A stretch of DNA of 64,000 nucleotides from Phyllobates terribilis. Lineage: Eukaryota. Below the pieces are notes generated by a model that was given only the letters and a program-made list of their open reading frames with translations, was not told where the DNA came from and made no database searches. The stretch spans positions 156,426,001 through 156,490,000 of the forward strand of contig NW_027362764.1 of the NCBI RefSeq assembly GCF_046119375.1, in the 5' to 3' direction. Below, piece by piece: positions 7,247 to 58,452 of this stretch; positions within the stretch are counted from its first letter, which is position 1, and every line of letters starts with the position of its first letter. Both the position numbers and the translations under genes were made by a program.

Positions 7247-8024
7247 TGTAGTGAGCTGGCCGGCTCTGGCTGTTCTGTGATAATTGATATAGAGCCTGTT
7301 ACAGAAGTGATTACACAGGATGATGTTGCCACCTTGTGGCCAGAGGTTGCACCTGCGCAGGGTGTGATGACAGAGAAAAAGACTGAGCCTCCTGTGTCCC
7401 GCCCTAGAGAGTCACGTGACCAAAGTGGGAAGCAGGAAAAAGCGCGTGAAGTGTCTGCTGTGGTCTGTGAAAAGAGCCAGGACGGTGTGCAGGCCCTCGT
7501 GTGTGGCACAGGAGAGACTCTCAACGTGATTTCTTCTATCTAACACCATATCCTCGGAGCCTTCCCCAGCTTCTGCACTGCTGAAGGATACAGCTATTAC
7601 ACTCCCTGCTACTGGAGTGTGGACTACATAAGGGGACCCACCAGAGCTTCTATCCGGATCAGAGAGACTGTAAGGGGGACCTCTGGCCAGAGGCCGAAGT
7701 ATCCCTTCCTTTCTTTCCGCGAATTCTGCTGTTCCTGTTTTTTTTTCGGCTGGGACGCCCTCCTGCAAAGACAGACAGGCCTACGACGGGGGACACATCC
7801 TTCTGGAGTAAAGGACTGGTAACGTGTGAGTAGGGACAGTGAGGGTCAGCTTATCAGTACACGTTATTACTGTGCATATTTACGGTTGTCATTTATTGTT
7901 TTTCTTTGCTGTGTTAAAAATGTATACGAGTAAAGATACGGTTATCAAGATAGAGTCTGTGTGTGGGGATCTTGCTGGGCCAGATCATAGATACCAATGC
8001 GCGGCCTTGCCCGCGGTCACTTCA
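7247..8024 (+). repeat. G1 5' LTR (778 bp)
   Basis: Matches 13124-13886 except about 14 substitutions and one ~17-bp indel counted by eye; TG...CA ends. Confidence 0.95.
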
Positions 8025-8026
8025 TC

Positions 8027-8044
8027 TGGCGTAGTCGGCAGGAT
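8027..8044 (+). promoter_or_regulatory. Primer-binding site complementary to tRNA-Ser 3' end
   Basis: TGGCGTAGTCGGCAGGAT is the reverse complement of the vertebrate tRNA-Ser 3' end (...ATCCTGCCGACTACGCCA). Confidence 0.92.
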
Positions 8045-8992
8045 CTGTGACCAACAGGACTCCCACCCAGGCCATGTGTACAGTCAGAAACCCCCGCCGG
8101 TGTCTATTGTGAATCAGGTCAGGAAATTTGGCGGACGAAACTACCCTGTACCAGAGTGGGCGGAGCAAGTCCGGATACTGCGGGAAATGTATAATATTGA
8201 CCCTAAGACCTTGGCAGAAATGGCGGTACTGACGCTAGAGGGGGAGGCATGGACGACAGTCAGAATGGAGACGGTCAGGGGCCAGCGTACAGTAGATGAT
8301 TTGGTGCGGGTGCTGGAGAACACCTATGGGCCGACCACATACCAGGGAACACTACGACACATGTTCTTTAGACGGACCCAGCTTGAATGGGAGGATATTC
8401 CCCAATATGCGAACGCCCTTCAGGTACTCCTTGAACAAACCTGTGGAAAAGGAGAGCAACTAGCTGGTATGGCTTCTCGTGACCTGGTACTGAGAGACCA
8501 ATTTGTAATAGGACTGAGAGACCAGTATCTTAACCGCACGTTACAGGACTTGATCCGGATGATGCCGGCTCTTACTTTTGCTGAAGTCAAATAGGAAGCC
8601 ATAGAACGTTCAAGGGGACCCGTCATGGATGTGGGGATTCAAGGTGCTGCGTGCAGATCCATATCTGACATTAAAAATCCGAACAGTGACACGGAAGACC
8701 TGAAACAGATGGTAGCAGACTTACAGAGACAGATATTACAGTTAACATTAGACTGACAGGGAGACCAGCGAAGACAGCCTAGTCGTCCCGTGGGACAGTG
8801 TTGGTCATGCGGTGATCCTCGCCATAGGGCAAATCGTTGTCCTCAACACTTCCCTCCGCAACAACCTCCGTCTCACCAACGAACAAACCCTCAGTCACCC
8901 CAGCGAAGGGAATTTCGATCAGACCAGCGAATGGAACCCCAGCCATATCCACAAGCAGAGCTACCACGCCGGGCCTCACCACAATGGCCGCC

Positions 8993-8999
8993 GTTAAAC
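8993..8999 (+). promoter_or_regulatory. Putative -1 ribosomal frameshift heptamer G TTA AAC (gag to pol)
   Basis: Immediately before the gag stop; the -1 frame is the protease frame. Confidence 0.7.
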
Positions 9000-11900
9000 T
9001 AGACACCCCTGCAGCTGAGGCTCGCGCAGCAGGGGAGGCCAAGGAGAGGGGTGTGGAAAAACAGAGCCGATGGCGGAGTGCTCTTGCCGCGAATAGCCCG
9101 ACACTTGAAGTTGTCCTGGAAGGAATTGCCGTACAGGGACTGATGGACACCGGGTCACAAGTGACCACGATCTCTGAACAGTTTTCCGAAAATTACCTCA
9201 AACCAAGAACTGCTCGTGACCTAGACACCTCCATTAAGATTATTGCGGCTAATAATCTACCCATTCCAGTGACCGGAGTTGCTTGGATGGACACAAAGGC
9301 TTGCGGACAGGACTTAGGAAAACGAGGGATCGTCATCGTCAAGGAAGGTTTCGGCTCCGAGACCCCAGTGATAGTTGGAATGAACATCTTGAAGGACCTG
9401 GATCTTATGCTGTTGACAAGAAAAGGACCCAAATATTGGCAGAAAGTCACCAAACATAAGCCGACTCGTCTGGCGTTCCAGCGCGTAATCCGGACCGTTG
9501 GACTTCAATAGATGGCAGAGGAACAACTACCCCTAGCCGCCATTATGGTGCCACGCCGTACTCAGATTACTTTGCCCGCTGAAAAAGAGACAGTCATTTC
9601 CTTACCCCTTAACACCCACCGACAACTTGAGGGGGTTCAAGTGTTGATCGAGCCGAGGACCCCAAGTGGGGGTAAGCTAAACCCACTAGTTGCTCGCACT
9701 CTAGCCGTCGTGAGGAACGGGAGAGTCCCTGTCAGGCTAAACAACACCGCAGACGTAGGCCTAGCCCTTGAAGCCGGCACTCAACTTGCCCGGGTATATG
9801 CTCTACCCACGGAAGTGAATCCCATTGGGCCCCTAGAATTCACCCCGTCTACAGAAGGCGACTGGACGGTAACCATCTCAGCCATAAACGCTCAAGTAGA
9901 CGATGAAGACATTGGGCGAAAACTATGGGAAAAAGTGCAGCTAGACACGTCTCAGTACACCAAACAAGAAGTGTCTCAAGTGGAGGAACTCCTGCGGGAA
10001 CACCAAGACTCCTTTGCAAAGCATGACACAGACTTTGGGTGTACCACCAGTATCCAGCACGAGATACCCACAGGCGATACCCCCCCTATCCGCGAGAGGT
10101 ACCGGCAGATACCACCTCAGCAATACCAGGAGGTGAAAAGCCTGTTAGAATCTATGCTACACGCCGGAGTGGTACGTGAAAGCCAGAGCCCGTGGGCTGC
10201 ACCCGTGGTGATAGTCAAAAAGAAAGATGGTTCCCTAAGGTTTTGCGTGGACTACCGTAGGCTGAACGCTTGCACTATCCGGGACTCATATCCACTTCCT
10301 CGGATCGAAGAGTCACTGACCGCCCTGAAGAAGGCCAAATATTTTTCGTCCCTAGATCTGGCCAGTGGATATTGGCAGGTTCCAATGAGTGAGAAGGACA
10401 GGGAAAAGACCGCCTTCATCCTTCCCATGGGCCTGTATGAGTTTGACCGGATGCCGTTCGGCTTGAATAACGCACCGGGGACCTTTCAGAGACTAATGGA
10501 ACGCTGTCTGGGGGACTTCAACTTTGAGTTTACGCTGATATACCTTGACGACATCGTGGTATACTCCGCCACCTTTGAAGATCATCTTCACAAGCTTGGC
10601 CAAGTGTTCCAGCGCTTGAGGCGACACGGCTTGAAGTTGAAGCCCAGCAAGTGCCATCTGTTCCAGCAGGAAATCGACTACTTGGGTCACCGGATCTCGG
10701 CCGAAGGCGTCCAGCCCTCTCCGGAGAAGATAGCAGCCGTTCAAGAGTGGCCGCAGCCAACTACCGTCAAAGATGTCCGGGCCTTTCTGGGGCTAACAGG
10801 CTACTACCGTCGGTTAGTCAAGGACTTTGCTCGGCTTGCTGAACCACTGCATGAGGTTCTCCGAGGGACCGCGAACAGCCCCAGAGGACGACGCATCAGT
10901 TGGGGGCCTGACCGAGAAAAATCCTTTCAGGCACTTAAGGCTGCTCTAACATCACCCCCTGTTCTGGCATATGCAGACTACACATTACCGTTTCAGTTGC
11001 ACACCGACGCCAGCCTTCAAGGTCTAGGGGCGGTCCTCTCTCAAGTTCAAGATAATAAAGAACGCGTGATAGCCTATGCCAGTAGGTCTCTCCGCGACAC
11101 CGAAAAGAATCCCGTCAACTACAGCTCCTTCCGCTTGGAACTCTTGGTTCTGACTTGGGCTATGACGGAGAAATTTGCCGGCTATCTGACAGGAGCGGAG
11201 GTGCTGGTCATGACGGACAACAATCCTCTTGCCCACCTAGAGAATGCAAAACTAGGGGCAATGGAACAGCGCTGGATGGCCAGGCTCTCTAGATTCCAGT
11301 ACAAAATTAAATACAGGGCGGGGAACGAGAATCAGAATGCTGACAGCCTGTCTAGAGTGACATCATCCCCACCAGTGGGGGACCGGGATGAAGAGTTGGA
11401 GGAAGATGAGATGCCTGACTTTGCCCGGCTCGCAAAGCAAATAGAAGATAGCCGCCAGTATGCGGTAGGAGGGATTGAAGCCGTAGTGGGATCTCCCCTG
11501 TCCCAGCAAGAATGGGCCAAGCTTCAAGATCGAGATCCCGAGCACGTCTTACTGAAAAAGTATGTGAATAAACAAGAGAAACCGCCCTCCGAAGTGAGAG
11601 CCCGACTATCGACCGGAGCCTTGGCTCTGCTTGCCCAGTGGGATCGGCTGATCGTGAAAGATGGAGTCCTGTGTCGCAGGGCCCTTTTATCCCATATGCT
11701 GGAGGAGTGTTTGCAGATTGTCGTCCCGGTGCAGTTGGCCCATGAGATGGTGGGCGAAGCTCACAGGAGGAACGGCCACTTCGGCATAGACAAGACCCTC
11801 CGGTGGACCCAGCAGTTCATTTTTTGTCCGGGGCTCCGTAAGTTGGTTGAAAACGTCTGTCAAGCATGCCGTACCTGTGAATTCCACAAGTCCGCGGAGC

Positions 11901-13109
11901 AGCGTGCCCCCGTCCAGACTATTAAGACGTCAAGGCCCCTCGAGCTGTTGATGGTGGACTATCTGTTGATTGGAACAGCGAATAGTGGCTACCAGTACTG
12001 TCTGGTGATGGTGGACCACTTCACGAAATTCGCTGTCGCTGTTGCTACCAAGGATCAGACTGCTGAATCAGCTGCACAGGCTATCTGTCAGCAATTCGTT
12101 CGGGTCTACGGGTGTCCGGAGCGGCTACACTCTGATCAGGGGGCTTGTTTCGAAGGGTGAGTCATTGAAGAACTCCAACGGATGTATGGAATCAAGAAGT
12201 CCAGGACCACCCCTTACCATCCACAAGGGAATGGCACGTGTGAACGCTTTAACCGGACCCTCTTACAACTGATCCGGACTTTGGCTGAAGACAAAAAGCC
12301 CGACTGGCCTCGATTCCTCCCGGAACTGCTGTGGGCCTATAATAATCAGGTCCATTCCGTCACCGGATACACCCCATACACCCTTCTCTTTGGCCGTCCA
12401 GGCAAAGACATCCATGAGTTGCAACTGTCTAGCTCCGAAGAAGATACCTGTGGTACCTATCCTTCCTGGCTACAAACACACCGCCAGAGAATGGAGACTG
12501 TCTACCGGCTAGTAGGCCGACAAATTCAGGATCAAGTGCACGCTGACCCACTTCCGGTACAAGAAGACCCACTGAATGTAGGTCAACTGGTCCTAGTCCG
12601 AATAAAGAAGCCACAAGGGAAACTCCGGCCCAAGTGGGAGACCGAAGTCTATCGAGTAATTGGACAGCCGTACCCCGGTGGCCCCGTCTATCGAGTGCAG
12701 GGCGAAGACAGCGGCAGCATCCGAACTTTGCACCGTAATATGTTGCGCCCCTGCCGTTCCCAGCCTGACTCCCCTACTGTGATACCTAGAGAGATGGATA
12801 TCACTAATACTGTCGTAGACACTGACCCCGGGGATGTAGAGACTGAATGCATGCCTACCCCTGTCCGTCCGACTGACGCACTTGAACCGATTACCTCCTC
12901 TACTGACATGTCGACTGGGAAAGAGAGTGGGGTGACTGATAGGAGAGAGGGGATCCAACCCGTTAGGCGGACAATGAGGGCCACTGCAGGGGTACCTCCA
13001 GGACAGTCCTACAGAGACCAATATGTGTGGCCCTCTTCCCAGCCGCCCCCTGTCACATCCACAGCCATCGCCGCCCTGGAGCCGGTCGTTGGCAGGGACT
13101 GCCAACCTT

Positions 13110-13123
13110 TGAGTGGGGGGGCG
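13110..13123 (+). promoter_or_regulatory. G1 polypurine tract
   Basis: GAGTGGGGGGGCG directly before the TG of the 3' LTR. Confidence 0.8.
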
Positions 13124-13886
13124 TGTAGTGAGCTGGCCGGCTCTGGCTGTTCTGTGATAATTGATATAGAGCCTGTTACAGAAGTGATTACACAGGATGA
13201 TGTTGCCACCTTGTGGCCAGAGGTTGCACCTGCGCAGGGTGTGATGACAGAGAACAAGACTGAGCCTCCTATGTCCCGCCCTAGAGAGTCACGTGACCAA
13301 AGTGGGAAGCAGGAAAAAGCGCGCGAAGTGTCTGCTGTGGTCTGTGAAAAGAGCCAGGACGGTGTGCAGGCCCTCGTGTGTGGCACAGGAGAGACTCTCA
13401 ACGTGATTTCTTCTATCTAACACCATATCCTCGGAGCCTTTCTGAAGGATTCAGCTGTTACACTCCCTGCTACTGGAGTGTGGACTAAATAAGGGGACCC
13501 ACCAGAGCTTCTATCCGGATCAGAGAGACTGTAAGCGGGACCTCTGGCGAGAGGCCGAAGTATCCCTTCCTTTCTTTCCACGAATTCTGCTGTTCCTGTT
13601 TTTTTTTCCGTCTGGGATGCCCTCCTGCAAAGACAGACAGGCCTGCGACGGGGGACACATCCTTCTGGAGTAAAGGACTGGTAACGTGTGAGTAGGGACA
13701 GTGAGGGTCAGCTTATCAGTACACGTTATTACTGTGCATATTTACGGTTGTCATTTATTGTTTTTCTTTGCTGTGTTAAAAATGTATACGAGTAAAGATA
13801 CGGTTATCAAGATAGAGTCTGTGTGTGGGGATCTTGCTGGGCCAGATCATAGATACCAATGCGCGGCCTTGCCTGCGGTCACTTCA
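13124..13886 (+). repeat. G1 3' LTR (763 bp)
   Basis: Copy of 7247-8024. Confidence 0.95.
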
Positions 13887-19205: not shown

Positions 19206-20947
19206 GACAGCTCGGAGAGGTCGTCCTAGGCAAGAGTAAATCCTCTCCATCCTTGACTCTGTCTGTTTCTATTTCCAGTGGTGATACCCGCTTCTTCGAG
19301 ACTGCCCATCTGGATTCCGGAGCCGCTGGAAATCTCATTCAACAGGCTGTTGTGGAGCGGTATCAGATTCCTACCGTACGTCTGGCTCAAACGTTGGCGG
19401 TTGCCTCCGTGGATGGGAGACTTCTTCCGGAAACCATCTTGCTCTTCACAGAGCCTGTAACCCTTCAGGTGGGAATGCTGCACTCGGAGAAGATCTCCTT
19501 TCATGTGCTGTCCGGTCTCTCTCACCCCCTCTTGCTTGGTCTACCCTGGTTACAAAGACATAAGCCCGTCCTTAATTGGAGATCTGGTGAAATGCTTCGT
19601 TGGGGTCAGGAATGCCATGAGTAATGTCTAATTCTGGTTCGTCCTGCTCAACCCCTGTCTTCTCTGGCTAATCTACCTCATCTGCCGGCACCCTACTGGT
19701 CCTATGCGGACATCTTTGACAAAAAGGTAGCGGAGACACTATCCCCTCATAGGCCGTATGATTGCCCCATCGACCTAGTACCTGGTGCTTCTCCTCCTCG
19801 CGGGCGAATCTACCCCTTGTCGCTGGCTGAGACCCGGGCCATGTCTGAGTACATAGAAGAGAATCTTGCTAGGGGATTTATCCAGAAATCCACCTCTCCG
19901 GCTGGAGCAGGATTCTTCTTCGTCAAGAAGAAAGACGGCTCTCTACGTCCCTGTATCGATTACAGGGGCCTTAACCAGATTACCATCAAAAATAAGTACC
20001 CCCTGCCTCTCATCTCGGAACTGTTTGACTGTCTTAAAGGCGTGAAGATCTTCACCAAGCTCGATCTTCGTGGGGCGTACAATTTGGTCCGGATCCGCCA
20101 GGGAGACGAGTGGAAGACGGCATTCAACACCCGGGACGGTCACTACGAATGCCGAGTGATGCCCTTTGGTCTCTGTAATGTTCCAGCCATCTTCCAGGAG
20201 CTGGTTAACGACATCTTCGTTGACCTCCTGTATACTTACGTGGTGGTGAACCTGGACGATATCTTGGTTTTCTCTCCGGATCTGCCCTCACACCGGAGGG
20301 ATGTTCGTCAGGTTCTGCTTAGGCTCCGGAAGAATCGCCTATACGCTAAATTCGAGAAATGCCTCTTTGAGCAGACCTCTCTGCTGTTCCTGGGCTATAT
20401 TATCTCCAAGACTGGTCTGCGGATAGATCCGGAGAAGGTGTCCGCTGTCTTAAAGTGGCCCCGACAGGAGGGGTTGAAGGCGATTCAGCGATTCCGGGGC
20501 TTCGCAAACTATTACCGCCTCTTCATTCCTCATTTCTCCTCCCAGACTGCTCCCATCTCCGCGCTCACCCGTAAAGGAGCAAATCCCAGGGAATGGACTT
20601 ACGAAGCGGAGAAGGCCTTCATCTCCCTTAAACAAGCCTTCTCCTCCGCTCCTGTGCTGCACCATCCAGATTGCAACAAGCAGTTCTTCCTGGAGGTTGA
20701 TGCATCCTCCTCCGGAGCCGGAGCGGTGCTCACCCAGAAATCCTCGTCCGTGAGAATGGTAACCTGCGGCTTCTTCTCCAAGCTCTTCTCCTCGTCCGAG
20801 CGCAACTACTCCATAGGAGATCGTGAGCTGCTGACCATCAAATTAGCGCTGGAGGAATGGCACTACTTGCTGGAGGGGTCTCTGCACCCGGTGGTCATCT
20901 ACACTGACCACAAAAACCTCTCTTATTTACAGAACACCCAAAGACTA
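19187..20947 (+). pseudogene. pol: Element A Pol (PR, RT with NLDD instead of YLDD, partial RNase H)
   Basis: LDSGAAGN; KKKDGSLRPCIDYRGLN; VNLDD; FLEVDAS. GGGAAAC slippery site at 19187-19193. Confidence 0.9.
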
Positions 20948-22177
20948 TGTAACGGGTCTTGTTGGTGGAACCACAGAGCAACTATACAAAGGGGCAGTCC
21001 TTGTAAGGAAGCGGGTGACACCCAGGGAAGGCAGGCAGGCAGTCACGGCTAGTGACGGGGACAGTCTCTGGGTAAGAGGGCAGGAGGTCACGGCAAGTGA
21101 CGGGGACAGTCTCTGGGTAAGAGGGCAGGAGGTCACGGCAAGTGACGGGGACAGTCTCTTGACAGGCGGGTGGTCACGGCAAGTGATGGCTAAGCCTCCA
21201 GGTAGGCCAGCAGGCAGGTAGCAGGTGGACGCTCCCAGGTGAGCGGGCGAGAGTCTCTGGACAAGCGGGTGGTCACAGCAAGTGACGGCTGAGCCTCCAG
21301 GTAGGCAAGCAGGCAGGTAGCAGGTGGACGCTCCCAGGTGAGCGGGCGAGAGTCTCTGGACAAGCGGGTGGTCACAGCAAGTGACGGCAGAGCCTCCAGG
21401 TAGGCTAACAGGCAGGTAACAGGTGGACGCTCCCAGGTGAGCGGGTAAGAGTCTCTGGACGGGCAGGTGGTCACAGCACGTGACGGCAGAGCCTCCAGGT
21501 AGGCTAGCAGGCAGGTGGCAGGTGGACGCTCCCAGGTGAGCGGGCAAGATTCTCTGGACAGGCAGGTGGTCACAGCACGTGACGGCAGAGCCTCCAGGTA
21601 GGCTAGCAGGCAGGTAGCAGGTGAGCGCTCCCAGGTGAGCGGGCAAGAGACACTGGACGGGCAGGTGGTCACAGCACGTGACGGCAGAGGCTCCAGGTAG
21701 GCTAGCAGGCAGGTAGCAGGTGAGCGCTCCCAGGTGAGCGGGCAGACGGATCCATAGACAGACTGGCAGGGCTGGTAGGCAGACTGTCGGACCGCAGGAA
21801 TAACAGCAGATAGACACGAGTCAGGCAGGTATCAGACAGGAAACTGGCAGGTAGCTGTCAGGTAACTGGCAGGTAACTGGAAACGGGACCTGAGGGCTGA
21901 AGCAGAGTGATGAAATATGCTACAACATTGCTCGGGCACCTCCTTTTTGGAGGAGGTGCCTTATATATGGAGAGGTCCTCCGGCCATTGGCCGGGGACTC
22001 CTTAGGATGGCGCGCGCGGCCCCTTTAAGAGAGGGGGAGCGCGCGCGCGCCCTAAGCACAGTGACCGGGGAGGAGCGCGCGCTGCCAGCAGAGTGGGAGG
22101 AAGATGCCGGGCACGGAGCGGAGAGGTGAGGGGAACAGCGTCCCTGCCTAGCAGGAGGCAGGGACGCCGACGCTACA
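20948..22177 (-). repeat. Element B 3' LTR (1230 bp) with 3x45-bp and 6x99-bp tandem units
   Basis: TGTAGCG...GTTACA. CAGGTG(G/A) landmarks recur at 21222, 21321, 21420, 21519, 21618 and 21717. Confidence 0.92.
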
Positions 22178-25100
22178 GTACCCCCCCCCTTTAGGCCCCC
22201 CCTTTTTTAGGCCAGATAGAAATTTACCAAGGATGAGAGGGGCATGGATGTTCTCCTGGGGCTCCCACGTTCTCTCCTCAGGACCAAACCCCTTCCAATC
22301 TACTAGAAAAAAGGTCTTTCCTCTTACCCTTTTGGTGGCCAGAATGTTCTCTACCTCAAACTCGTTTTCAGCAGAAACCGGAGCAGGAGGCGTACCTGTA
22401 GACTTGGAAAAAGAGTTAAGTACCACGGGCTTGAGGAGAGATACATGGAAGGAATTAGGGATCCGCAAGTTGGCCGGGAGTTTCAATTTATAGGCCACCG
22501 GGTTGATCTGTTTGATAACCTCCAGTGGGCCGATGAACCGAGGCCCTAACTTGTAGGAAGGAACCTTGAGCCGGACATACTTGGACTAGAGCCAGACTTT
22601 ATCTCCAGGACGGAATTGTGGAGGATCCAGGCGTTTTTTGTCAGCGTGTTTTTTCATCCGCTCGGACAACTGAAGGAGTACGGACCGGGTACTCTCCCAA
22701 ATGGAGGAAAATTTGCTAACGAGAGATTTCGCAGCCGGATTGTCCACCGAGGTGGAGACGGGAAATGGGATCCTAGGATGCTGACCGAAGACTACAAAAA
22801 ACGGGAATTTGGAGGAAGATTCGCTCTCGTGATTATTGTAAGAGAATTCGCCCCATGGCAGGAGATCCACCCAGTCTGAATGGTGGGCATTAACGAAGTG
22901 CCGGAGGTAACTGGTCAGGATCTGATTGATCCGCTCCACTTGACCATTGGACTGTGGGTGGTAAGCGGAGGAGAAGTCCAGGGTGACGTCTAGCAGCTTA
23001 CATGTGGCTCTCCAGAAGCGTGAGGTGAACTGAACCCCACGATCCGACACGATGTGGAGGGGCAGGCCATGAAGACGGAAGATGTGGCGGATAAAGTCTT
23101 TAGCCAGCTCGGGTGCAGACGGGAGGCCTGGCAGGGGAATGAAATGAGCCATTTTGGAAAAGCGGTCAGCGACCACCCAAATGACCGTACAACCGGCAGA
23201 GACAGGGAGATCTGTTATGAAGTCCATAGCTATATGCTGCCAGGGGGCAGCAGGTACTGGAAGAGGAAGGAGGCGACCGGCTGGCAGGTGTCTCGAAACC
23301 TTGTTGCGGGCGCTGGACACACAGGCAGAAACAAAGTCTATTACGTCCTTGTGCAGGGTAGGCCACCAGTAGTGCCGGGTGATAAGCTGGAGGGTCTTTT
23401 TCTGACCGGCGTGGCCAGCTAGCTTAGACGAGTGACCCCAGTGTAGGATCTTCTCCCGATCAGGTACCGTTACGAACGTCTTACCGGGAGGGAGACGATT
23501 TAGACTCACGGGGGCCACCTGCATTACTCTGGCGGGATCGATGATGTGTTTAGGTTCCTCCTCAAGATCAGACACCAGGAAGGATCGGGACAAGGCGTCA
23601 GCTTTGATGTTTTTGTCAGCCGGGCGAAAATGAAGAACAAAATCAAAGCGAGCAAAAAACAAGGACCACCGGGCTTGGCGCGGGTTAAGTCTCTGGGCAC
23701 TCTGGAGGTAAGCCAAGTTCTTGTGGTCCGTGTAAATTATTACTGTGTGAAGAGCCCCCTCGAGCAGGTAACGCCACTCCTCCAATGCCAGCTTAATGGC
23801 CAATAACTCTTGGTCTCCTATAGAATAGTTGCGCTCAGAAGAGGAGAAGAGTTTGGAGAAGAAGCCGCAAGTTACCATTCTCCCGGAAGATGATTTTTGG
23901 GTAAGTACCGCTCCGGCTCCAGAGGAGGAGGCGTCAACTTCCAGGAAGAATTGCTTGTTGCCGTCCGGGCGATGCAGCACCGGGGCGGAAGAGAAAGCCT
24001 GTTTTAAGGAAAGAAAGGCTTCCTCTGCTTCGGGCGGCCATTCTCTTGGATTAGTGCCCTTACGGGTGAGCGCAGAGATTGGGGCAGTCCGGGAAGAGAA
24101 GTGCGGTATGAAGAGGCGGTAGTAGTTGGCGAAGCCCAGGAACCGCTGAATAGCCTTCAACCCCTCTCGTCGAGGCCACTTCTCGATGGCAGACAGTTTC
24201 TCAGGATCCATTCGTAGGCCGATCTGAGAAATTATGTAGCCCAAAAACGGAAGCGAGGTCTGCTCAAAGAGGCACTTCTCATATTTAGCATAGAGGTGGT
24301 TCTGCCTGAGCCTGAGCAGGACCTGACGAACGTCCCTCCGGTGAGTCTGGAGATCCGGAGAGAAGACCAAGATGTCGTCCAGGTACACCACTACGCAGGA
24401 GTAGAGAAGGTCCCGGAAGATGTCATTGACCAACTCTTGAAAGACGGCGGGAGCGTTACAGAGACCAAAGGACATTACCAGATATTCATAGTGGCCGTCC
24501 CGGGTGTTGAATGCCGTCTTCCATTCATCCCCCTGACGGATACGGACCAGGTTATAGGCCCCACGGAGGTCCAGCTTGGTGAAGATTCTAGCCCCCCTCA
24601 GACGGTCAAATAATTCCGGAATGAGCGGAAGGGGGTATTTATTCTTCACGTGATCTGGTTAAGGCCTCTATAGTCTATACAGGGACAGAGAGAGCCGTCC
24701 TTCTTTTTAACGAAGAAGAAGCCTGCTCTCGCCGGGGAGGTAGATTTTCGGATAAATCCCCGGGCCAGATTCTCCTCAATATATTCAGACATAGACCGGG
24801 TCTCAGCAGCGAACAACGGGTAAATACGCCCACGGGGAGGAGTAGTGCCGGGTAACAGGTCGATTGGGCAGTCGTATGGTCTATGAGGGGGTAATGTCTC
24901 TGCCTCCTTTTTATTAAAGACGTCCGCATAAGAGCAATAAGGAATCGGAAGTCCAGGTAGATTAGCTGGGGTAGGAGAAGGACGGACAGGATGGACGGGA
25001 ACTAAACAAGTCTTATGGCAGTCCTGTCCCCACCGAAGGACTTCTCCGGTCTGCCAATCAAGCACGGGTGCATGTCTCTGAAGCCAAGGTAGGCCTAGCA

Positions 25101-38749: not shown

Positions 38750-39456
38750 CTAATTGCTCAAAAACCTGCAGTGGAGAATTGCATTCATGAAGAACCTGCA
38801 GTGGAGAATTGCATTCATGAAGAACCTGCAGTGGAGAATTGCATTGTTGAAGTAGAAGAACCTGCAGTGGAGAACTACAATGTTGAGCCTGAAGAATTTA
38901 CAATGGAGAATTGTGCTGTAGTAGCAGAAGAAACTATAATGGAGAATTGCAATGTAATATCAGAAGAGAAGAGCCTTTAATAGATAATTTATCATCATCA
39001 GAAGAATTGATAAATGAAAATATTGTTGAACCAGAGATCCTTGAAGAAATGATGCCTCCTCAAGATAACTGCTCAATATCGCCTTCTTTTGAAGATGTAT
39101 CTGACAGCATTGAGCAGAATGCATCTCCAAAACTTCCTGTTATTTGCTTAAATTATAGTAAATACAGGAAGTATAAGTAAAAAGAACAGTATGATCACTG
39201 GTCTGAAACTTCTGATGACGATATTGAATATATACGTTCATATACAGAGCCTCTCTCACATCAAAAAGATTTCCATTAAGATTTTCCTGAACCTCCCAGA
39301 TTATTACCAGAGGAAGTGAAACATTTTAAGGAGCTGACTACAGCAAATAGGTCAAAAAAGTCCTTTAGAAAGCACTCTGGTTCAAATAGTGGTCTATATG
39401 AAGCTGATGAAAATATGTTATGGCATCTAAAGGATCGTGAATACAACTGTAGTATA
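38750..39456 (+). pseudogene. Decayed acidic ORF of unknown origin
   Basis: EEPAVENC-type repeats. One 5-bp duplication frameshift (~38965), then about 160 codons with only two TAA stops. Confidence 0.5.
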
Positions 39457-39540
39457 CAGTGTCCATTTTAGGACATGATCAGATATCAAAATCAAACATC
39501 AGAATGATGTCAGTTTGAGGCTAAATACCCTGCCTGAGAA

Positions 39541-39820
39541 CTGATTCTGACGAGTGATTCTGACGAGTGATTCTGACGAGTGATTCTGACGAGTGATTTT
39601 GACAAGTGATTTTGACGAGTGATTCTGATGAATGATTCTAACGAGTGATTCTGACGAGTGATTTTGACGAGTGATTCTGACAAATGATTTTGACGAGTGA
39701 TTCGGACGAATGATTTTGACGAGTGATTCTGATGAGTGATTCTGACGAGTGATTCTGACGAGTGATTTTGATGAGTGATTCTGACGAGTGATTTTGATGA
39801 GTGATTCTGACGAGTGACTT
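39541..39820 (+). repeat. 13-bp tandem array (TGATTCTGACGAG), left arm, about 21 copies
   Basis: Direct reading. Confidence 0.93.
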
Positions 39821-39847
39821 TTACAACTGTAAAAAAAAAAGTAACTA

Positions 39848-39916
39848 TTCGTTGATGGGACTTGAACCCAAAATTCTGTGTCCCAAAGCCAGTGCACTAA
39901 ACACTAAGCTATTAAC
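39848..39916 (-). other. tRNA-like module 1 (nominal anticodon TGG), left arm
   Basis: TAGCTTAGTGTTTAGTGCA A-box/D-arm, TGGG-TTCAAGT-CCCA T-arm, then a T10 run. Confidence 0.75.
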
Positions 39917-40157
39917 TTACTTGTAAAACCCTTAGAGTTCTATTTGGTTCTATGATTTTCAGTGCAAAGTTGTCTAAAACTCATTGGGACGTATGCACAG
40001 ACTGCAAGCAAGCCAAATTCAAATGATGTTTGATTCTGATGTGTGAGTCTGAAGTGTGACTTTCTTCAAACATCAGAATCACAATAACTTTTAGTCACCC
40101 TGAGTATTTTCATGGTTTATCTCATAAGACAAGAAAAGCTACTAGTTGCTATCACTT

Positions 40158-40226
40158 GATTGGATAGCGCAATGGTAAGGTATCAGTCTCTCAAACTACA
40201 GTATGAGAGTTCAAATTCCGATAGGA
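40158..40226 (+). other. tRNA-like module 2 (Gln/Glu-like), left arm
   Basis: TAGCGCAATGG A-box, CTCTCAA loop, GAGTTCAAAT B-box, T6 at 40236. Confidence 0.7.
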
Positions 40227-40677
40227 ACAAGAATGTTTTTTAAATTATGACTGTTTAGCACACAAACTACAGGGGTATTTTACTTTTAATATCTGACACT
40301 GATTGTCATACTGATGTGTTAAGAGTTCAGACACGCTGACTATTTGCATGGTAAATTACATAGCCAAAGTAAATTGGGAGTTTGCAGCCCGTACTTGGGT
40401 GGATGGAAATAAATATTTACAATAAAGACATTTCATCATTAGACCCCTTTAAGAAATTATGCAAATATAAAGTCACTTGGAAATAGATATGTAGTAATTT
40501 ATTGCCTCCCAATTTACTTTGGCTATGTAATTTACCATGCAAATAGACAGCGTGTCTGAAACTCTTAACACATCAGGATGACAATCAGAGTGTCAGATAC
40601 TAAAAGTAAAACACCCCTGTAGTTTGTGTGCTAAATAGGCATAATTTAAAAAAAAAAAAAATAAATAATGATCTTCT

Positions 40678-40742
40678 TCCTATCAGGATTTGAACTCTGA
40701 CACTGTTCAGAGACTTATGCCTTACCATTGCGCTATCCATTC
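40678..40742 (-). other. tRNA-like module 2, right arm
   Basis: Reverse complement TAGCGCAATGGTAAGGC...CTCTGAA...GAGTTCAAATCC, followed by a long T run. Confidence 0.7.
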
Positions 40743-40854
40743 AAATGACAATAGTGGTAGCTTTTCTTGTCTTATGAGATCAACCATGAAAATACTCAGG
40801 GTGACTAAAAGTCATTATGATTGTGATTCTGATGTTTGAAGAAAGTCATACATA

Positions 40855-41174
40855 CAGTGTCCATTTTAGGACATGATCAGATATCAAAATCAAACATCAG
40901 AATGATGTCAGTTTGAGGCTAAATACCCTTTCTGAGAACTGATTTTGATAAGTAATTCTGACAAGTGATTTTGATGAGTGATTCTGACAAGTGATTTTGA
41001 CAAGTGATTTTGATGTCAAAATCACTCGTCAGAAACATTCGTCAGAATCACTCATCAGAATCACTCGTCAGAATCACTCGTCAGAATCAGTTCTCAGACA
41101 GGGTATTTAGCCTCAAACTGACATCATTCTGATGTTTGATTTTGATATCTGATCATGTCCTAAAATGGACACTG
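40855..41174. mobile_element. 320-bp miniature copy of the same TIR family nested in the right arm
   Basis: TA|CAGTGTCC...GGACACTG|TA with two opposed short 13-bp arrays. Confidence 0.88.
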
Positions 41175-41389
41175 TACTAACCAATAGTTTTTCTTGTCTT
41201 CTGAAATTAACCATGAAAATACTCAGGGTGACTAAAAGTTATTGTGATTCTGATTCTGATGTTTGAAGAAAGTCAGACATCAGACTCACACATCAAAATC
41301 AAACATCATCTGAATTTGGCTTGCTCGCAGTCTGTGCATAAGTCCCAATGAGTTTTAGACATATAACCAAATATAACTCCTAGGTTTTT

Positions 41390-41452
41390 ACAGCTGAGTT
41401 AGTGCACTGGCTTTGGGACACAGAATTTTGGGTTCAAGTCCCATCAGCGAAC
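41390..41452 (+). other. tRNA-like module 1, right arm
   Basis: TTAGTGCACTGGCTTTGGGACACAG...GGGTTCAAGTCCCA then a T run at ~41459-41471; the A-box is partly deleted. Confidence 0.7.
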
Positions 41453-41483
41453 AGTTACTTTTTTTTTTTTTATTACAGTTGTA

Positions 41484-41868
41484 AAAGTCACTTGTCAAAG
41501 TCACTTGTCAGAATCACTTGTCAAAATCACTTGTCAGAATCACTCGTCAGAATCACTCGTCAAAATCACTTGTCAGAATCACTTGTCAGAATTACTTGTC
41601 AAAATCACTCATCAAAATCACTTATCAAAATCATTTGTCAAAATCACTTGTCAGAATCACTTGTCAGAATCATTTGTCAAAATCTCTTATCAGAATCACT
41701 TGTCAGAATCACTCATCAAAATCACTTGTCAGAATCACTCGTCAGAATCACTCATCAGAATCACTCGTCAAAATCACTCGTCAAAATCACTTGTCAGAAT
41801 CACTCGTCAGAATCACTTGTCAAAATCACTCATCAAAATCACTTGTCAGAATTACTTATCAAAATCAA
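41484..41868 (-). repeat. 13-bp tandem array, right arm (about 30 copies, inverted)
   Basis: (GTCAGAATCACTC/T)n. Confidence 0.93.
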
Positions 41869-42929
41869 TTCTCAGACAGGGTATTTAGCCTCAAACTGAC
41901 ATCATTCTGATGTTTGATTTTGATATATTATCATGTCCTAAAATGGACACTGTAGATATGGTGGTTAGTTCTACTTTCCTTTTCGGCTCTGCTTTATGTT
42001 ATATGATCTGATTTATCAATTTAATTGTGGGGACTCTGCTATACTTTATAGGCAATTTTCAAAGTCCTATCCTTTTTCTTTTTCCCCATGGAGACCCTCT
42101 ATGAGCTATCTATAATGTAATGATAGAATCCACACTACACGATGCTGTACTGTGCACATGCGCATCTTTCTCTATCCCCGTAGGCATCCGGGAGCGCTCA
42201 GATCTGACCGCTTGCATTCCAGCATGCGGGTCAGTGAGCGCTTCCACCGAAAGCCTCTTTCACCTTAGGGGAGGAGCAGATGCCTCATGCACTGATAAGG
42301 TCCGGTAAATGTCTCACCCTATTTTCCCTGGACGCTTTCATAGGCTGTCACGCTATATGGAAAGATGTCCACCCCTCACCCTGACACTCCCCTGGAAGAA
42401 GCAAGCAGTCGAAACACGCGTCGGGATGAAGGGGGGCGGAATCCTGCTCTGGATCCTAGACTTTCCTCATTTGGCTCCTTTCCTTGCACCATTTTACACC
42501 AGGTATACAGTTTTTACTCTAACACTTTCCCTCTAGTACTATTAATAGTCATTATGGCTTCTATAAGTGTTTGGGCATTATTTATTTGGATCTGAACACA
42601 GGGTTATATTCTAGCCCATTATAAGATCTTATATTGTACCTACTATACCATAGACAGCCACTAATCATGTATACTATGGTGGGGAACATGTTATAACGGA
42701 GTTTTCTATATATATTGATATACTAGATTAGGCTATTTGCATATATTTTTGAGCCTGCATTATATTTGGATCCTTAGTCAGGAGCTAGTCCCTCGTACTG
42801 GGCACTCTATTTTTTTTTCTTATTGACTGATAAAATAAAATTGATTATTTTATATTTTTGGATCTCTTCGTTTCTCTGCTCTAGGAATGTAGGGCAGGAT
42901 TAGTGGATTATGAATTTGTTTGAAGTGCC

Positions 42930-52880: not shown

Positions 52881-54965
52881 CAGGATTCTTCTTCGTCAAG
52901 AAAAAGGACGGCTCTCCTCGCTCTTGTATTGATTATATGGGTCTAAATCAAATCACAGTCAAGAACAAGTATCCTCTGCCCCTCATCTCCGAGCTGTTTG
53001 ATCGCCTCAAAGTTGCAAAGATCTTCACTAAGCTCGATCTTCGTGGCGCATACAAACTTATCTGGATTTGCCAGGGAGATGAGTGAAAGGAGTCATTCAA
53101 CACTAGGGAAGGCAACTATGAGTACCGCGTGATGCCCTTCGGACTCTGCAATGCACCAGCAGTCTTCCTGGAACCAGTGAATGACATCTTCCGATATCTT
53201 CTATAATCCTGTGTGGTAGTGTACCTGGACGATATCCTGGTGTTCTCTTCTGATCTGCCCTCACATCAAAGAGACGTACAACAGGTATTGCAGAGGCTCA
53301 GGAAGAATCGTCTGTATGCCAAATTCGAGAATTGCGTTTTGGAACAGACTTCACTCCCATTCCTTGGATACATAATCTTGGAGACCGAGCTTAAGATGGA
53401 CCCTGAAAAAGTGGCTGTAGCTCTTAAATGACCCCGACCTGAGGGGTTGAAGGTTACTCAGCGGTTTCTGGGATTTGTTTATTATTACCGCCTGTTCAGT
53501 CCTCATTTTTCCTCCCGGACTGCTCCCATCTCTGCCCTGACCTGCAAAGGTGTGAATCCCAAGGAATGGACCCCCGAAGCGGAAAGTGCCTTTGTGTCCT
53601 TGAAACAAGACTTCTCTTCAGCTCCGGTACAACATCGTCCTGACTGTAACAAGCAGGTCTTCCTAGAGGTTGATGCCTCTTCCTCTGGGGCTGGAGCAGT
53701 TCTCACCCAGAAATCCTTGTCTGGGCGAATGGTGACCTGCGGCTTCTTTTCCAAGCTCTTCTCTCCTTTGGAGCGCAATTATTCCTTTGGAGATCAAAAA
53801 CTGCTTGCCATCAAACTGACACTGGAGATGTGGCGGCTTTTGCTGGAGGGGGCCTTGCATCCGGTGGTCGTCTACATGGACCACAAAAGTCTCGCCTACT
53901 TGCAGTCCACCCAACGACTCAATCCTAGTCAGGCCAGATGCTCTTTGTTCTTTGCCTGCTTCAATTTCTCTCTTCACTTCCATCCAGCAGACAAGAATAT
54001 TGAGGCAGATGCGCTCTCCCAATCATTCCTGTCCACTGATCAAGAGGAGGAGCCTCAGCACATCATTGAGCCCTCCAGAATAATGACTGTCGCCCCATTT
54101 GACCTGTCTCATTTTCCTCCTGGTAAGACCTTTGTGGCGGCACCGGATAAGAAAAGGGTCTTGTTCTGGGGTCGTTCGTCTAAACTGGCAGGTCATGCTG
54201 GTGAAAGGAAGACGCTTCTGCTAATTTCCCAACATTACTAGTGGCCGACCCTGCGCAAGGAGGTTGCGGATTTTGTCTCGGCTTGCTCTTCCTGTGCCCA
54301 AAACAAGACGCCGAGACCACTTCTGACTGGTTAACTTCTTCATCTACCCATGCCTTCCGCTCTGTGGCAAAATATTGCGATGGATTTCATCACAGATCTT
54401 CCTGTATCGGCCGGTTGTATAGTCATTTGGGTGATCGCTGACCTCTTCTCCAAGATTGCCCATCTCATTCCCTTGCCGAGTCTTCCTTCTGCTCCAGTGC
54501 TAGCTAAAGATTTCATCCTTCACATCTTCCATCTCCACGGCCCACCTCCTACCTTTTATATCATCTCAGATAGAGGACTTCAATTTACCTCACGCTTCTG
54601 GAGAGCCACGTGCAAGCTGCTGAATGTCGCTCTGGACTTCTCATCGGCCTATCATCCACAGCCAATGGCCAGGTTGAGCATATCAATGAGATCCTCACTA
54701 GCTTCATTCGGCACTTTGTCAACGTTCACCATAGCGACTGGGTGGAGCTTCTGCCTTGGGCCGAATTTTCCTACAATAACCACGTGAGTGAATCCTCAGC
54801 CAAATCGCCGTTCTTTGTGGTGTACGGTCAGCACCCCAATATTCCGTTTCCTGCCTCTACTTCCGTTGACAATCTTGCTGCAGAGTCTCTCATCAAAGAC
54901 TTTTCTGTGATTTGGGAGGATACTAAATCTACGCTGCTGCAGTCCTCTGAGCGAATGAAGAGACA
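52881..54965 (+). pseudogene. pol: Tf1/sushi element D, RT-RNaseH-integrase remnant
   Basis: [11 protein letters not shown]; YLDD; FLEVDAS; MDFITDLP; SDRG. Multiple stops and frameshifts. Confidence 0.92.
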
Positions 54966-56814: not shown

Positions 56815-57049
56815 GACTCGCCCCCTGGGCCGTGGGGCACTCGGATCCGGGCAATAGGGGGAACGATGGGAGTAGTAGTGGCAACCCGGTTCCGTGGCTC
56901 AGGGTGGTCAGGCCAGTGGTAGTCCGTTATGTGTTATTAATTATGTCCGACTACACCACCCGTGGATTGCGGTTATTAGGAACCGCCGCTGCATGCAGAC
57001 CGCTGGGGCTGATGAGGTGTGCAGCTAGGGTAGTGTGACTCCCCACGGG

Positions 57050-58452
57050 AAGAGTCTCGAAGTTTCGGTGCCCTAGACAGCATTCCATCAGCCGCTGGAA
57101 GGTCCCTGGTGCGTTGCAGAGCCCGAAGGGCATACAGTTGAATTCACTCAGTCCCATCGGGGTGGTGAAGGCGGTCTTCTCCTTGTCAGCCTCTGCCACA
57201 GGAACCTGCCAGTACCCGCTAGTAAGGTCCAAAGTAGAAAAGAAGTTAGCTGATTTTAGTGCGGCTAAAGACTCCTCTATTCTAGGCAGCGGGTATGCGT
57301 CTTTGTGGGTGATACGGTTGATTTGTCTATAGTCCACGCACATTCTCATGGTGCCGTCTTTCTTTTTGACCAGAACCAAGGGGGCTGCCCAGGGGCTACA
57401 GCTGTCTCTAATGACCCCAGCTTCCTTCATCTCTCTTAGCATGCCCTTTGCGTTCTGATAATGTGCAGGGGGTACAGGTCGGTGTCTTTCCTTTATCGGT
57501 GGGTGGCTCCCTGTGGGGATGTGGTGTTCTATCCACGTGGAGTCAGCACCCACGTGGAGTTTCTGGCACCAGTCCTCCTTTTGTTTCTGGGAGCCATTAC
57601 CCTCCGACTGAGGAGATGGAGGCAAGGGTTCCACGGCCCTGATAGCTTGGTGTTCGACAACAAACAGTTTGGCGAGTGTAGCGTACCTGGGTAAGTGTAC
57701 TTCCCTCTCCCCAATGTTGAGGATGCGGACGGGCACCCTCCCATGACGGACATCAACCACCCCCCGGGCTGTCAAAATGGTGGGCCTGCTGTCTGAGTAC
57801 ACGGGTTCTACCATGGCTTGGTAGTCTCTACCTCTCAACCCGATTGCAGTCCGACACCAGATCATCATTTCACTTTTGGGAGCCATGGAAATGGGGAATG
57901 GATCACTGAGTCTTACGCTACCGATCTCACCACCAGACAGTTCTACCTGCTGCCGTCTCATCAGGGCTTTTATCTCCTTGTTGAGGACTCTCTTTTGGCT
58001 GGAACTAGCATTCACCGCCACCTGTTGTAGAATTACAATTACCTCTGAAAGACAATTTTCAATTATGTTAGTACCCACAGTTATTTTAGGGTGACTTTCA
58101 TGACGGTCAATGTCCACAATAATCACTCCCTGTGCGGCAGTTCAACTTTACCAATTTTTATGGTCATCTCCTTGAACCCCATCTGTGGCACGGGTAAGCC
58201 ATTACTGGCGATGATGCTCAAGTTACTGTCTGGATACCGTGTGATATCAACATCAGTCCAATACTGCTTAAAAAGTACATAAGGGATTGTGGTTACTTGC
58301 GACCCAGTATCCAGCAAGGCGCTCATGGGGATACCGTCCAGCACCACGGGTAAAACCGGGCGCCCCCCAACGTACTTATCGCGCCAATTATAAGGGCCTG
58401 GTGATCTTATGCCTGGGGGTCGGCCCTCTGCCCCAGGTTGGACCCGTTTAAA
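57050..58452 (-). pseudogene. pol: Element E protease and N-terminal RT
   Basis: LLDTGSQ; SPWAAPLVLVKKKDG; [15 protein letters not shown]; ends at NFET before YLDD. Confidence 0.9.

What the first reader, a model, noticed from the sequence alone, without database searches (positions are those of the whole stretch)
39457..41952. Foldback DNA transposon carrying four tRNA-like Pol III modules
Seen: TA-flanked CAGTG...CACTG termini and ~1-kb inverted arms. Each arm holds a 13-bp tandem array and two different tRNA-like sequences arranged divergently about 250 bp apart. One points outward (nominal anticodon TGG, D-arm like TAGCTCAGTGGTTAGAGCA); the other points inward (CTC/CTG loop, Gln/Glu-like). 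Each has a B-box and is followed closely by a T-run, as a Pol III terminator would be; three of four keep a clear A-box. They lack SINE-type bodies or tails. Inference: a class II element that captured tRNA genes and could disperse TFIIIC/Pol III sites (insulators, small RNA sources). The two inward-facing units are convergent.
Basis: partly seen in the sequence, partly recalled or inferred. Interest (0 to 1): 0.7.

Follow-up and report, generated by a model that had tools for sequence, protein, structure and literature searches.

The report
Foldback transposon with tRNA-derived promoter relics
This is one worn copy of a very abundant, gene-less cut-and-paste transposon (in what earlier scan notes call a frog genome) built as a 2.5-kb palindrome; each arm carries two tRNA-derived stretches that keep RNA polymerase III promoter boxes and a T-run but no longer score as tRNAs, and nothing shows that they are used.

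Summary
At 39457-41952 lies a TA-flanked CAGTG...CACTG palindromic element with 13-bp subterminal arrays. Each arm has two divergent tRNA-like units, each followed by a T-run.

A 320-bp, TA-flanked short family member (40855-41174: ends plus arrays only, no tRNA-like units) sits between two copies of a ~106-bp duplication.

The units are not tRNA genes:
- Rfam's tRNA model gives 16.3 bits (threshold 29) for one unit and nothing for the other three.
- ARAGORN finds none, and none folds as a cloverleaf.

The combined A box + B box + T-run signature occurs only twice in the 64 kb, both times in this element (about 0.17 expected by chance).

Contigs from public runs show a family of very high copy number. 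The units stay joined to arrays and spacers in other copies and in a second species, and the family's majority base restores a perfect A box. So the units look like a fixed, ancestral part of the family, not later SINE insertions.

Within this copy they are no better conserved than their surroundings, and no transcription is shown.

The scan has already found this family at least four times on other DNA of the same genome, with the same reading.

Verdict: real, unusual in layout, function unproven, moderate interest.

The parts
39455..39456 (.). TA next to the left end (target-site duplication, left copy)
39457..39541 (+). Left terminal inverted repeat, unique 85-bp part starting CAGTG
   Evidence: 95-99% alike among the four ends
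39542..39817 (+). Left subterminal array, 13-bp unit TGATTCTGACGAG, 21 copies
   Evidence: 15 of 21 units keep the CpG
39831..39918 (-). Outer-left tRNA-derived unit (O-L): A box 39911-39901, nominal anticodon TGG, B box 39868-39858, T10 39840-39831
   Evidence: Rfam tRNA 16.3 bits for model positions 8-63, threshold 29; boxes and T-run
39919..40157 (.). Spacer between the divergent units, with array-like motifs (40024-40059)
40158..40241 (+). Inner-left unit (I-L): A box 40165-40175, B box (3 mismatches) 40208-40218, T6 40236-40241
   Evidence: no tRNA hit
40381..40505 (.). Central loop between the arms (about 125 bp)
   Evidence: arm homology ends at 40380 and 40506
40648..40745 (-). Inner-right unit (I-R): A box 40735-40725, B box 40696-40686, T14 40661-40648; 4-bp deletion compared with I-L and with other copies
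40745..40854 (.). First copy of the ~106-bp duplicated spacer segment
   Evidence: (D7)
40855..41174 (.). Nested short family member: ends plus about 6+6 array units, no tRNA-like unit, TA on both sides, near-perfect 160-bp-arm hairpin
   Evidence: its two ends 98.8% alike; single-strand DNA fold -148.6 kcal/mol, z -28
41175..41285 (.). Second copy of the duplicated spacer segment (starts with the TA)
41392..41471 (+). Outer-right unit (O-R): 5' part and A box lost by deletions of 12 and 3 nt, B box 41431-41441, T13 41459-41471
41479..41867 (-). Right subterminal array, 30 copies of the 13-bp unit, inverted; CpG kept in 6 of 29 units
41868..41952 (-). Right terminal inverted repeat ending CACTG
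41953..41954 (.). TA next to the right end (target-site duplication, right copy)

Best explanation
This is an aged copy of a high-copy, non-autonomous, TA-inserting (Tc1/mariner-type) DNA transposon with a foldback build: end - 13-bp array - outward tRNA-derived unit - spacer - inward tRNA-derived unit - loop, then the mirror image.

Inferred: it moves by cut-and-paste, using a transposase supplied by another element. That transposase would recognise the ~85-bp ends and perhaps the repeated 13-bp motif.

The tRNA-derived units are ancestral passenger sequence of the family. They are two decayed tRNA pseudogene-like Pol III units, one Pro(TGG)-like and one known only by its A and B boxes, taken up once in one arm and doubled when the palindrome formed. 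They are not needed for mobility, because the nested 320-bp derivative lacks them and is flanked by TA on both sides, as an independent insertion would be.

Shown: anatomy, abundance, linkage of the units to the family, and the failure of the tRNA tests.
Inferred: the superfamily, the mode of movement and the origin of the units.
For: - TA|CAGTG...CACTG|TA at both the outer and the nested element.
- More than 10,000 contigs of one DNA run lie on the element, with summed word depth 1e4-1e5 against about 25-700 on the flanks. About 27 contigs in X2 leave the element within a base of the TA at 41175-41176 into unlike flanks.
- Other-copy contigs (10-15% different) join array to O-L (39789-39924), spacer to I-L (40005-40300) and O-R to array (41398-41561). 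Organism B holds O-L, spacer+I-L and I-R pieces.
- About 100 contigs carry C at 39901, which makes the O A box a perfect TAGCTTAGTGG.
- The A+B+T signature is found only here in the 64 kb.
- O-L aligns to tRNA positions 8-63 with D and T arms and a TGG anticodon.
- The units sit at mirror positions in homologous arms.
- The element's only long ORFs are stop-free readings of the arrays, and no transposase ORF was found among the ten window ORFs scanned.
Against: - The superfamily rests on the TA flanks and on a resemblance of the terminal bases recalled from memory. No transposase partner was found, and no Repbase or Dfam check was possible.
- No full-length second copy could be read as sequence. 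Metagenome and viral collections hold none and the window holds no other piece. 'Fixed part of the family' therefore rests on short contigs and on unchecked earlier notes.
- Contig depth over I-L is about ten times lower than over its neighbours, so some copies may lack or vary the inner unit.
- The ~106-bp duplication around the nested copy is not explained by a simple TA insertion.
Confidence: 0.75

Rival explanations
1. The units are working, or recently working, Pol III genes or TFIIIC sites. On this view the family spreads thousands of small Pol III transcription units or TFIIIC-bound boundary sites, and keeps them because open chromatin or the small RNAs help the element or the host.
For: - O-L, I-L and I-R have A and B boxes at tRNA-like spacing (43, 43 and 39 nt start to start) and a T6-T14 run 17-24 nt after the B box.
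- The family's majority base restores a perfect A box.
- The same two-unit layout is kept in a second species.
- One both-sided difference keeps a 6-bp stem in the inner unit: CTCTCA/TGAGAG in I-L against CTCTGA/TCAGAG in I-R.
Against: - No transcript evidence. The only possibly-RNA run gives contigs that run across a T-run (41398-41561), which looks like read-through or DNA.
- Within this copy the inner unit is the least conserved part (87.8% against 94-96.5%) and the outer unit is average (95.7%). O-R has lost its A box.
- tRNA scores are at background.
- The nested derivative shows that the units are dispensable for insertion.
Confidence: 0.15
2. The units are heads of tRNA-derived SINEs that inserted independently into this copy.
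For: tRNA-derived sequences that have A and B boxes but no acceptor stem are typical of SINE heads (general knowledge). Earlier notes report tRNA-derived SINEs in this genome.
Against: - The units lie at mirror positions in arms that are homologous throughout.
- A T-run follows within 17-24 nt; there is no body, no A-rich tail on the unit's own strand and no flanking direct repeats.
- No copy of either unit lies elsewhere in the 64 kb.
- Other copies and another species hold them in the same context.
Confidence: 0.03
3. They are true tRNA genes (Pro-TGG and Gln/Glu) carried by a transposon.
For: A nominal TGG anticodon, with D and T arms, in O-L.
Against: - 16.3 bits against the gathering score of 29; no hit for the other three.
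- ARAGORN finds none at default settings. Hits appear only at 70-80% thresholds, where the window gives 33-221 calls.
- No acceptor stems and no cloverleaf; fold z-scores -1.7 to +0.6.
Confidence: 0.01
4. The locus is not one element with a nested insertion. It is two truncated family members plus a short one, joined by recombination or faulty repair, or it is an assembly artefact of a high-copy repeat.
For: - The ~106-bp duplication flanks the short copy, and its two copies differ by 8%.
- There is no TA at the matching site in the second copy of the duplication.
- No listed contig spans the junctions.
Against: - The outer ends are a matching inverted pair, and the order of parts is otherwise fully mirror-symmetric.
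- The short copy has TA on both sides.
Confidence: 0.2

Closest known systems
Tc1/mariner-derived MITEs with internal tandem repeats, e.g. miDNA4-Xt of Xenopus tropicalis (Scalvenzi & Pollet 2014, as cited in PMC12054243)
   Same: Gene-less, high-copy amphibian element with inverted ends and tandem repeats inside. The superfamily is Tc1/mariner, whose hallmark TA target duplication is seen here.
   Different: Here the arrays are subterminal, inverted and in both arms; the whole element is a 2.5-kb palindrome; and it carries four tRNA-derived units. Membership was not tested: no sequence of miDNA4 was at hand.
MER6/MER6A: a mariner-derived MITE that carries the V domain of a SINE (PMC6887750)
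   Same: A non-autonomous Tc1/mariner-type element that picked up a piece of a Pol III-related retroposon and spread it by DNA transposition.
   Different: MER6 carries a conserved SINE body domain, not promoter heads with terminators. It has one copy, not four in mirror layout, and is found in mammals.
Amphibian tRNA-derived repeat families spread at the DNA level: OAX (Xenopus), Rana/polIII (water frogs), PolIII/TAN (newt), as listed in PMC12054243
   Same: tRNA-derived, Pol III-type units multiplied in amphibian genomes by something other than plain retroposition.
   Different: Those are tandem arrays; here the units ride in a dispersed transposon. Sequence relatedness could not be tested.
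Foldback elements of Drosophila (FB) and Galileo
   Same: Long inverted arms made largely of short tandem subrepeats, with little or no coding capacity.
   Different: From my own knowledge, FB makes 9-bp and Galileo 7-bp target duplications and they belong to other superfamilies; here the flank is TA. The likeness is in architecture only.
FEDoR, a ~3.5-kb non-autonomous element of Rana temporaria (PMC12054243)
   Same: A frog element with internal tandem repeats and paired forward and reverse inverted repeats lying close together. This recalls the short hairpin copy nested here.
   Different: FEDoR is described with 47-bp and other repeat motifs and 91- and 49-bp inverted repeats, and no tRNA-like units are reported. 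Not compared by sequence.
tRNA-derived SINE heads / tRNA pseudogenes
   Same: A and B boxes at tRNA spacing; D and T arms recognisable in the outer unit.
   Different: No body, no tail and no target duplication of their own; each is followed at once by a T-run, like a gene with its terminator.

Membership tests
Tc1/mariner superfamily (non-autonomous member) | TA target-site duplication | tested here: met
   TA on both sides of the outer element and of the nested copy. Many other-copy contigs leave the element within a base of the TA.
Tc1/mariner superfamily (non-autonomous member) | Terminal inverted repeats matching those of an autonomous element that encodes a DD(E/D) transposase | not testable with these tools
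   The ends are 95-99% alike. No transposase was found among the ten window ORFs scanned. No repeat library or genome search was available. The CAGTG start resembles Tc1/Tc3 only from memory.
Drosophila-type Foldback (FB) family | Long arms built of short tandem subrepeats | tested here: met
   13-bp arrays of 21 and 30 units in the arms.
Drosophila-type Foldback (FB) family | 9-bp target-site duplication (my own knowledge) | tested here: not met
   The flanks share only TA.
tRNA gene (Rfam RF00005) | Covariance-model score at or above the gathering score of 29 bits | tested here: not met
   O-L scores 16.3 bits for model positions 8-63. O-R, I-L and I-R give no hit at E<=10 in searches of 101-116 nt. 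Nothing in the window reaches a gathering score.
tRNA gene (Rfam RF00005) | Cloverleaf with acceptor stem | tested here: not met
   ARAGORN finds 0. Hits appear only at 70-80% thresholds, where the window yields 33-221 calls. Minimum-energy folds are not cloverleaves.
Type-2 Pol III transcription unit | A box and B box 30-60 nt apart, followed by a run of at least 4 T | tested here: met
   O-L and I-R pass the strict scan. I-L passes with a 3-mismatch B box. O-R lacks the A box.
Type-2 Pol III transcription unit | Transcribed by Pol III / bound by TFIIIC | not testable with these tools
   Only assembled contigs of a run that is guessed to be RNA were available, and these cross a T-run.
tRNA-derived SINE | tRNA-related head with internal promoter | tested here: met
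tRNA-derived SINE | Body and LINE-related or A-rich tail, with its own target-site duplication | tested here: not met
   A T-run follows 17-24 nt after the B box, there is no A-rich tail on the unit's strand, and the units sit at mirror positions in homologous arms.
MITE | Short (under about 800 bp), no coding capacity, inverted ends, high copy number | tested here: inconclusive
   The nested 320-bp copy fits. The 2.5-kb element is too long but is otherwise alike.

The most novel reading that the evidence does not exclude
A high-copy DNA transposon family has seeded a large frog genome with thousands of paired, divergent Pol III/TFIIIC-competent tRNA-derived units. Young copies would act as TFIIIC-bound boundary or open-chromatin sites, or as small-RNA sources, that favour the element's own excision or shape host chromatin. 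This would be a cut-and-paste counterpart of what SINEs do by retroposition.
Probability: 0.1. Interest if true: 0.7.

Novelty: new variant of a known kind. Interest (0 to 1): 0.35.

Why it matters
Pol III promoter elements and TFIIIC sites are known to spread through genomes on SINEs, that is, by retroposition. A very abundant cut-and-paste element that carries four promoter-plus-terminator units as a standing part of its body would be a second, DNA-level route for spreading such sites. It could help explain how tRNA-like repeats multiply in amphibian genomes that are poor in SINEs.

As it stands, this copy shows only decayed relics. The nested unit-less derivative shows that the units are cargo. 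The value of the finding is therefore a well-defined family to test, not a demonstrated mechanism.

Tried and rejected
- Other copies as sequence. The exact 23-nt end was sought in metagenome and viral contigs and gave 0 hits. A 15-nt core gave 119 loci, none related to the element by blastn. A blastn of the element against the window found no other piece.
- Literature. Six searches, including four motifs of the element's ends and units as text, found no description of this family. One paper that was followed up proved irrelevant.
- Earlier-findings look-ups by sequence and by SINE-head words were blank.
- The sub-threshold miRNA hits (mir-7 29.4 bits against 51.8, and others) at 40965-41051 were rejected. 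They are the tip of the nested hairpin made of 13-bp units.
- I considered using the large protein search to fish out spurious ORFs of other copies. I dropped it because the contigs on this family are only 150-330 nt long and the search is costly.
- Independent SINE insertion, true tRNA genes and a purely local palindrome were rejected for the reasons given under the rival explanations.
Full report
**What is there**

The stretch 39457-41952 is bounded by a 24-nt end, CAGTGTCCATTTTAGGACATGATC. This end occurs four times in the 64-kb window and nowhere else: two pointing right (39457, 40855) and two pointing left (41174, 41952). None is expected by chance. Both the outer pair and the inner pair are flanked by TA on each side.

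Inside the outer pair, the left arm (39457-40380) and the right arm (40506-41952) are reverse complements around a ~125-bp loop. Arm-to-arm identity is 94-96.5% counting substitutions alone, and 82-86% once the many indels are counted.

Each arm begins with an ~85-bp unique end, followed by an array of a 13-bp unit. There are 21 copies at 39542-39817 and 30 copies at 41479-41867.

The right arm is interrupted. At 40855-41174 lies a complete short family member of 320 bp. It consists only of the two ends and about six array units on each side. As single-stranded DNA it forms an almost perfect hairpin (-148.6 kcal/mol, z = -28).

It is TA-flanked, and its two ends are 98.8% alike, against 95.3% for the host's two ends. 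It sits between two copies of a ~106-bp piece of the spacer (40745-40854 and 41175-41285, 92% alike).

A TA insertion does not make a 106-bp duplication, so something more happened here. The candidates are faulty repair or template switching at the hairpin, recombination between copies, or misassembly of a high-copy repeat. I could not decide between them, because no listed contig spans the junctions.

**The tRNA-like units**

- The outer unit points outward in both arms.
  - O-L, minus strand: A box 39911-39901, B box 39868-39858, T10 39840-39831.
  - O-R, plus strand: B box 41431-41441, T13 41459-41471. Its 5' part and A box were lost through deletions of 12 and 3 nt.
- The inner unit points inward.
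  - I-L, plus strand: A box 40165-40175, B box 40208-40218, T6 40236-40241.
  - I-R, minus strand: A box 40735-40725, B box 40696-40686, T14 40661-40648.
- The divergent A boxes lie 254 bp apart.
- Each T-run starts 17-24 nt after the B box. There is no SINE body or tail, and the two inward units would each stop at their own T-run before they could overlap.

**Are they tRNAs?**

No.
- Rfam's tRNA model gives 16.3 bits for O-L, against a gathering score of 29. The match covers only model positions 8-63: D arm, a half-paired anticodon arm with the nominal anticodon TGG, and T arm, but no acceptor stem.
- The model gives no hit at all at E<=10 for the other three units, even in searches of about 100 nt.
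- Nothing in the window reaches any Rfam gathering score.
- ARAGORN finds nothing at default settings. At thresholds lowered to 80% and 70% the units begin to appear, but the window then yields 33 and 221 calls. That is background.
- None of the four folds as a cloverleaf, and their fold energies are ordinary (z from -1.7 to +0.6).

**Are they more than chance?**

Yes, as promoter-like units. I scanned for an A box (at most 1 mismatch to TRGCNNAGTGG), followed 30-61 nt later by a B box (at most 2 mismatches to GGTTCGANNCC), followed by at least four T within 45 nt. In the whole window, on both strands, this finds exactly two sites, O-L and I-R. Thirty first-order Markov simulations of the window gave a mean of 0.17 sites. 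I-L misses only through a third B-box mismatch.

The outer unit is clearly tRNA-derived. The inner unit is 'tRNA-like' only through its boxes and their spacing.

**Do the units belong to the family?**

I laid contigs of four public runs on 39300-42100 at 80% likeness.
- More than 10,000 contigs of one DNA run of organism A, and 7,000 of another, lie on the element. Summed word depth is 1e4-1e5, against about 25-700 on the flanks. The tool warns that this is not a copy number, but it does show a very abundant family.
- Contigs that differ from this copy by 10-15%, and so come from other copies, join array to O-L (39789-39924), spacer to I-L (several between 40005 and 40300) and O-R to array (41398-41561).
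- A run labelled as a different organism (B) holds O-L (39842-39963, 8 differences in 122), spacer plus the start of I-L (39915-40185) and I-R (40686-40812).
- About 100 contigs carry C where this copy has A at 39901. This turns the O-L A box into a perfect TAGCTTAGTGG. Likewise, most contigs differ from this copy at 40713, 40716 and 40740 and carry 4 extra bases at 40705, in agreement with I-L.

So the units are part of the family's ancestral sequence and were in better shape in the copies that multiplied.

One caveat: depth over I-L is about ten times lower than over its neighbours. Either this copy's I-L is unusually diverged, or the inner unit varies among copies.

The scan's earlier notes report the same four-unit layout at four other places of this genome, and the same TA-flanked foldback at a fifth. 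Those notes also call the genome a frog's. I did not test either point.

**Is there any sign of selection or use?**

None here. Between the two arms of this copy, the outer unit is as conserved as its surroundings (95.7% against 94-96.5%). The inner unit is the least conserved part (87.8%). O-R has lost its A box.

The one run that may be RNA gives short, diverged contigs on several parts of the element, including one that runs straight across a T-run. That looks like read-through or DNA, not discrete Pol III products.

One small oddity concerns a 6-bp stem in the inner unit. It reads CTCTCA/TGAGAG in I-L and CTCTGA/TCAGAG in I-R, a difference on both sides that keeps the pairing. It is a single event. 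Correction of a DNA quasi-palindrome could explain it as well as an RNA structure could.

**How it most likely works**

The element codes for nothing. Its only long ORFs are stop-free readings of the arrays. The neighbourhood holds Ty3/Gypsy pol genes, and none of the ten window ORFs scanned is a DD(E/D) transposase.

The TA flanks at two nested insertions, the many other copies that leave the element next to a TA, and the inverted ends together point to cut-and-paste movement by a Tc1/mariner-type transposase supplied by another element. That is an inference. The partner was not found, and no repeat library could be consulted.

The nested 320-bp copy shows that ends plus a few 13-bp units are enough for insertion. 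The tRNA-derived units are therefore cargo.

The simplest history is as follows. One arm once took up, or arose next to, two decayed tRNA pseudogene-like units with their terminators. Formation of the palindrome doubled them, and the family then multiplied.

The arrays have since evolved on their own. The CpG of the unit survives in 15 of 21 left units but in only 6 of 29 right units.

**Comparison with what is known**

By my reading of the papers found:
- The nearest relatives in kind are Tc1/mariner MITEs with internal tandem repeats, such as miDNA4-Xt of Xenopus tropicalis (cited in PMC12054243).
- MER6 is a mariner-derived MITE that spread a SINE domain (PMC6887750).
- The amphibian tRNA-derived repeat families OAX, Rana/polIII and PolIII/TAN are listed in PMC12054243.

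None of these has four promoter-plus-terminator units in mirror layout inside a foldback element.

Six text searches, one of them for four motifs of the ends and units, found no description of this family. Repbase and Dfam could not be checked, so 'undescribed' is not established.

The likeness to Drosophila FB or Galileo is one of architecture only, because the target duplication differs.

**Verdict**

- It is a class II foldback element.
- The units are a family feature with Pol III-type promoter anatomy.
- They are relics rather than tRNA genes.
- They are not needed for movement.
- Nothing shows that they are used.

This is the fifth or sixth sighting of the same family in this scan. Interest is moderate.

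Noticed in passing
window 40187-40208 (I-L) against 40697-40714 (I-R, minus strand): A 6-bp stem inside the inner unit differs between the two arms on both sides at once: CTCTCA/TGAGAG against CTCTGA/TCAGAG. The pairing is kept. This is a single event, and either an RNA structure or DNA quasi-palindrome correction could explain it.
   Followed up: partly
window 39542-39817 against 41479-41867: The two 13-bp arrays of one element differ in a systematic way: the unit's CpG is kept in 15 of 21 left units but only 6 of 29 right units, and copy numbers are 21 against 30. The arrays seem to have been homogenised or resized separately.
   Followed up: partly
window 40745-40854 and 41175-41285: A ~106-bp duplication (92% alike) flanks the nested hairpin copy exactly. 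TA insertion does not explain it. It may mark repair or template switching at a long palindrome, recombination between copies, or misassembly.
   Followed up: partly
window 40965-41051: Sub-threshold Rfam hits to miRNA precursors (mir-7 at 29.4 bits against 51.8, also mir-988 and mir-23) lie at the tip of the nested hairpin. They follow from the inverted 13-bp units and are not a miRNA gene.
   Followed up: yes
window 39300-39456: The left flank of the element is itself repetitive: summed contig depth is about 740 against about 25 on the right flank, and a 3-kb contig of another run matches it with 15 differences in 145.
   Followed up: no
window 7839-13420, 19817-21052, 22586-24649 (minus), 53447-54241, 56951-58126 (minus): Several Ty3/Gypsy-type pol ORFs (reverse transcriptase, RNase H, integrase) surround the element, so this is a retroelement-rich region. 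No DD(E/D) transposase was found among the ten ORFs scanned.
   Followed up: partly
   Followed up: no
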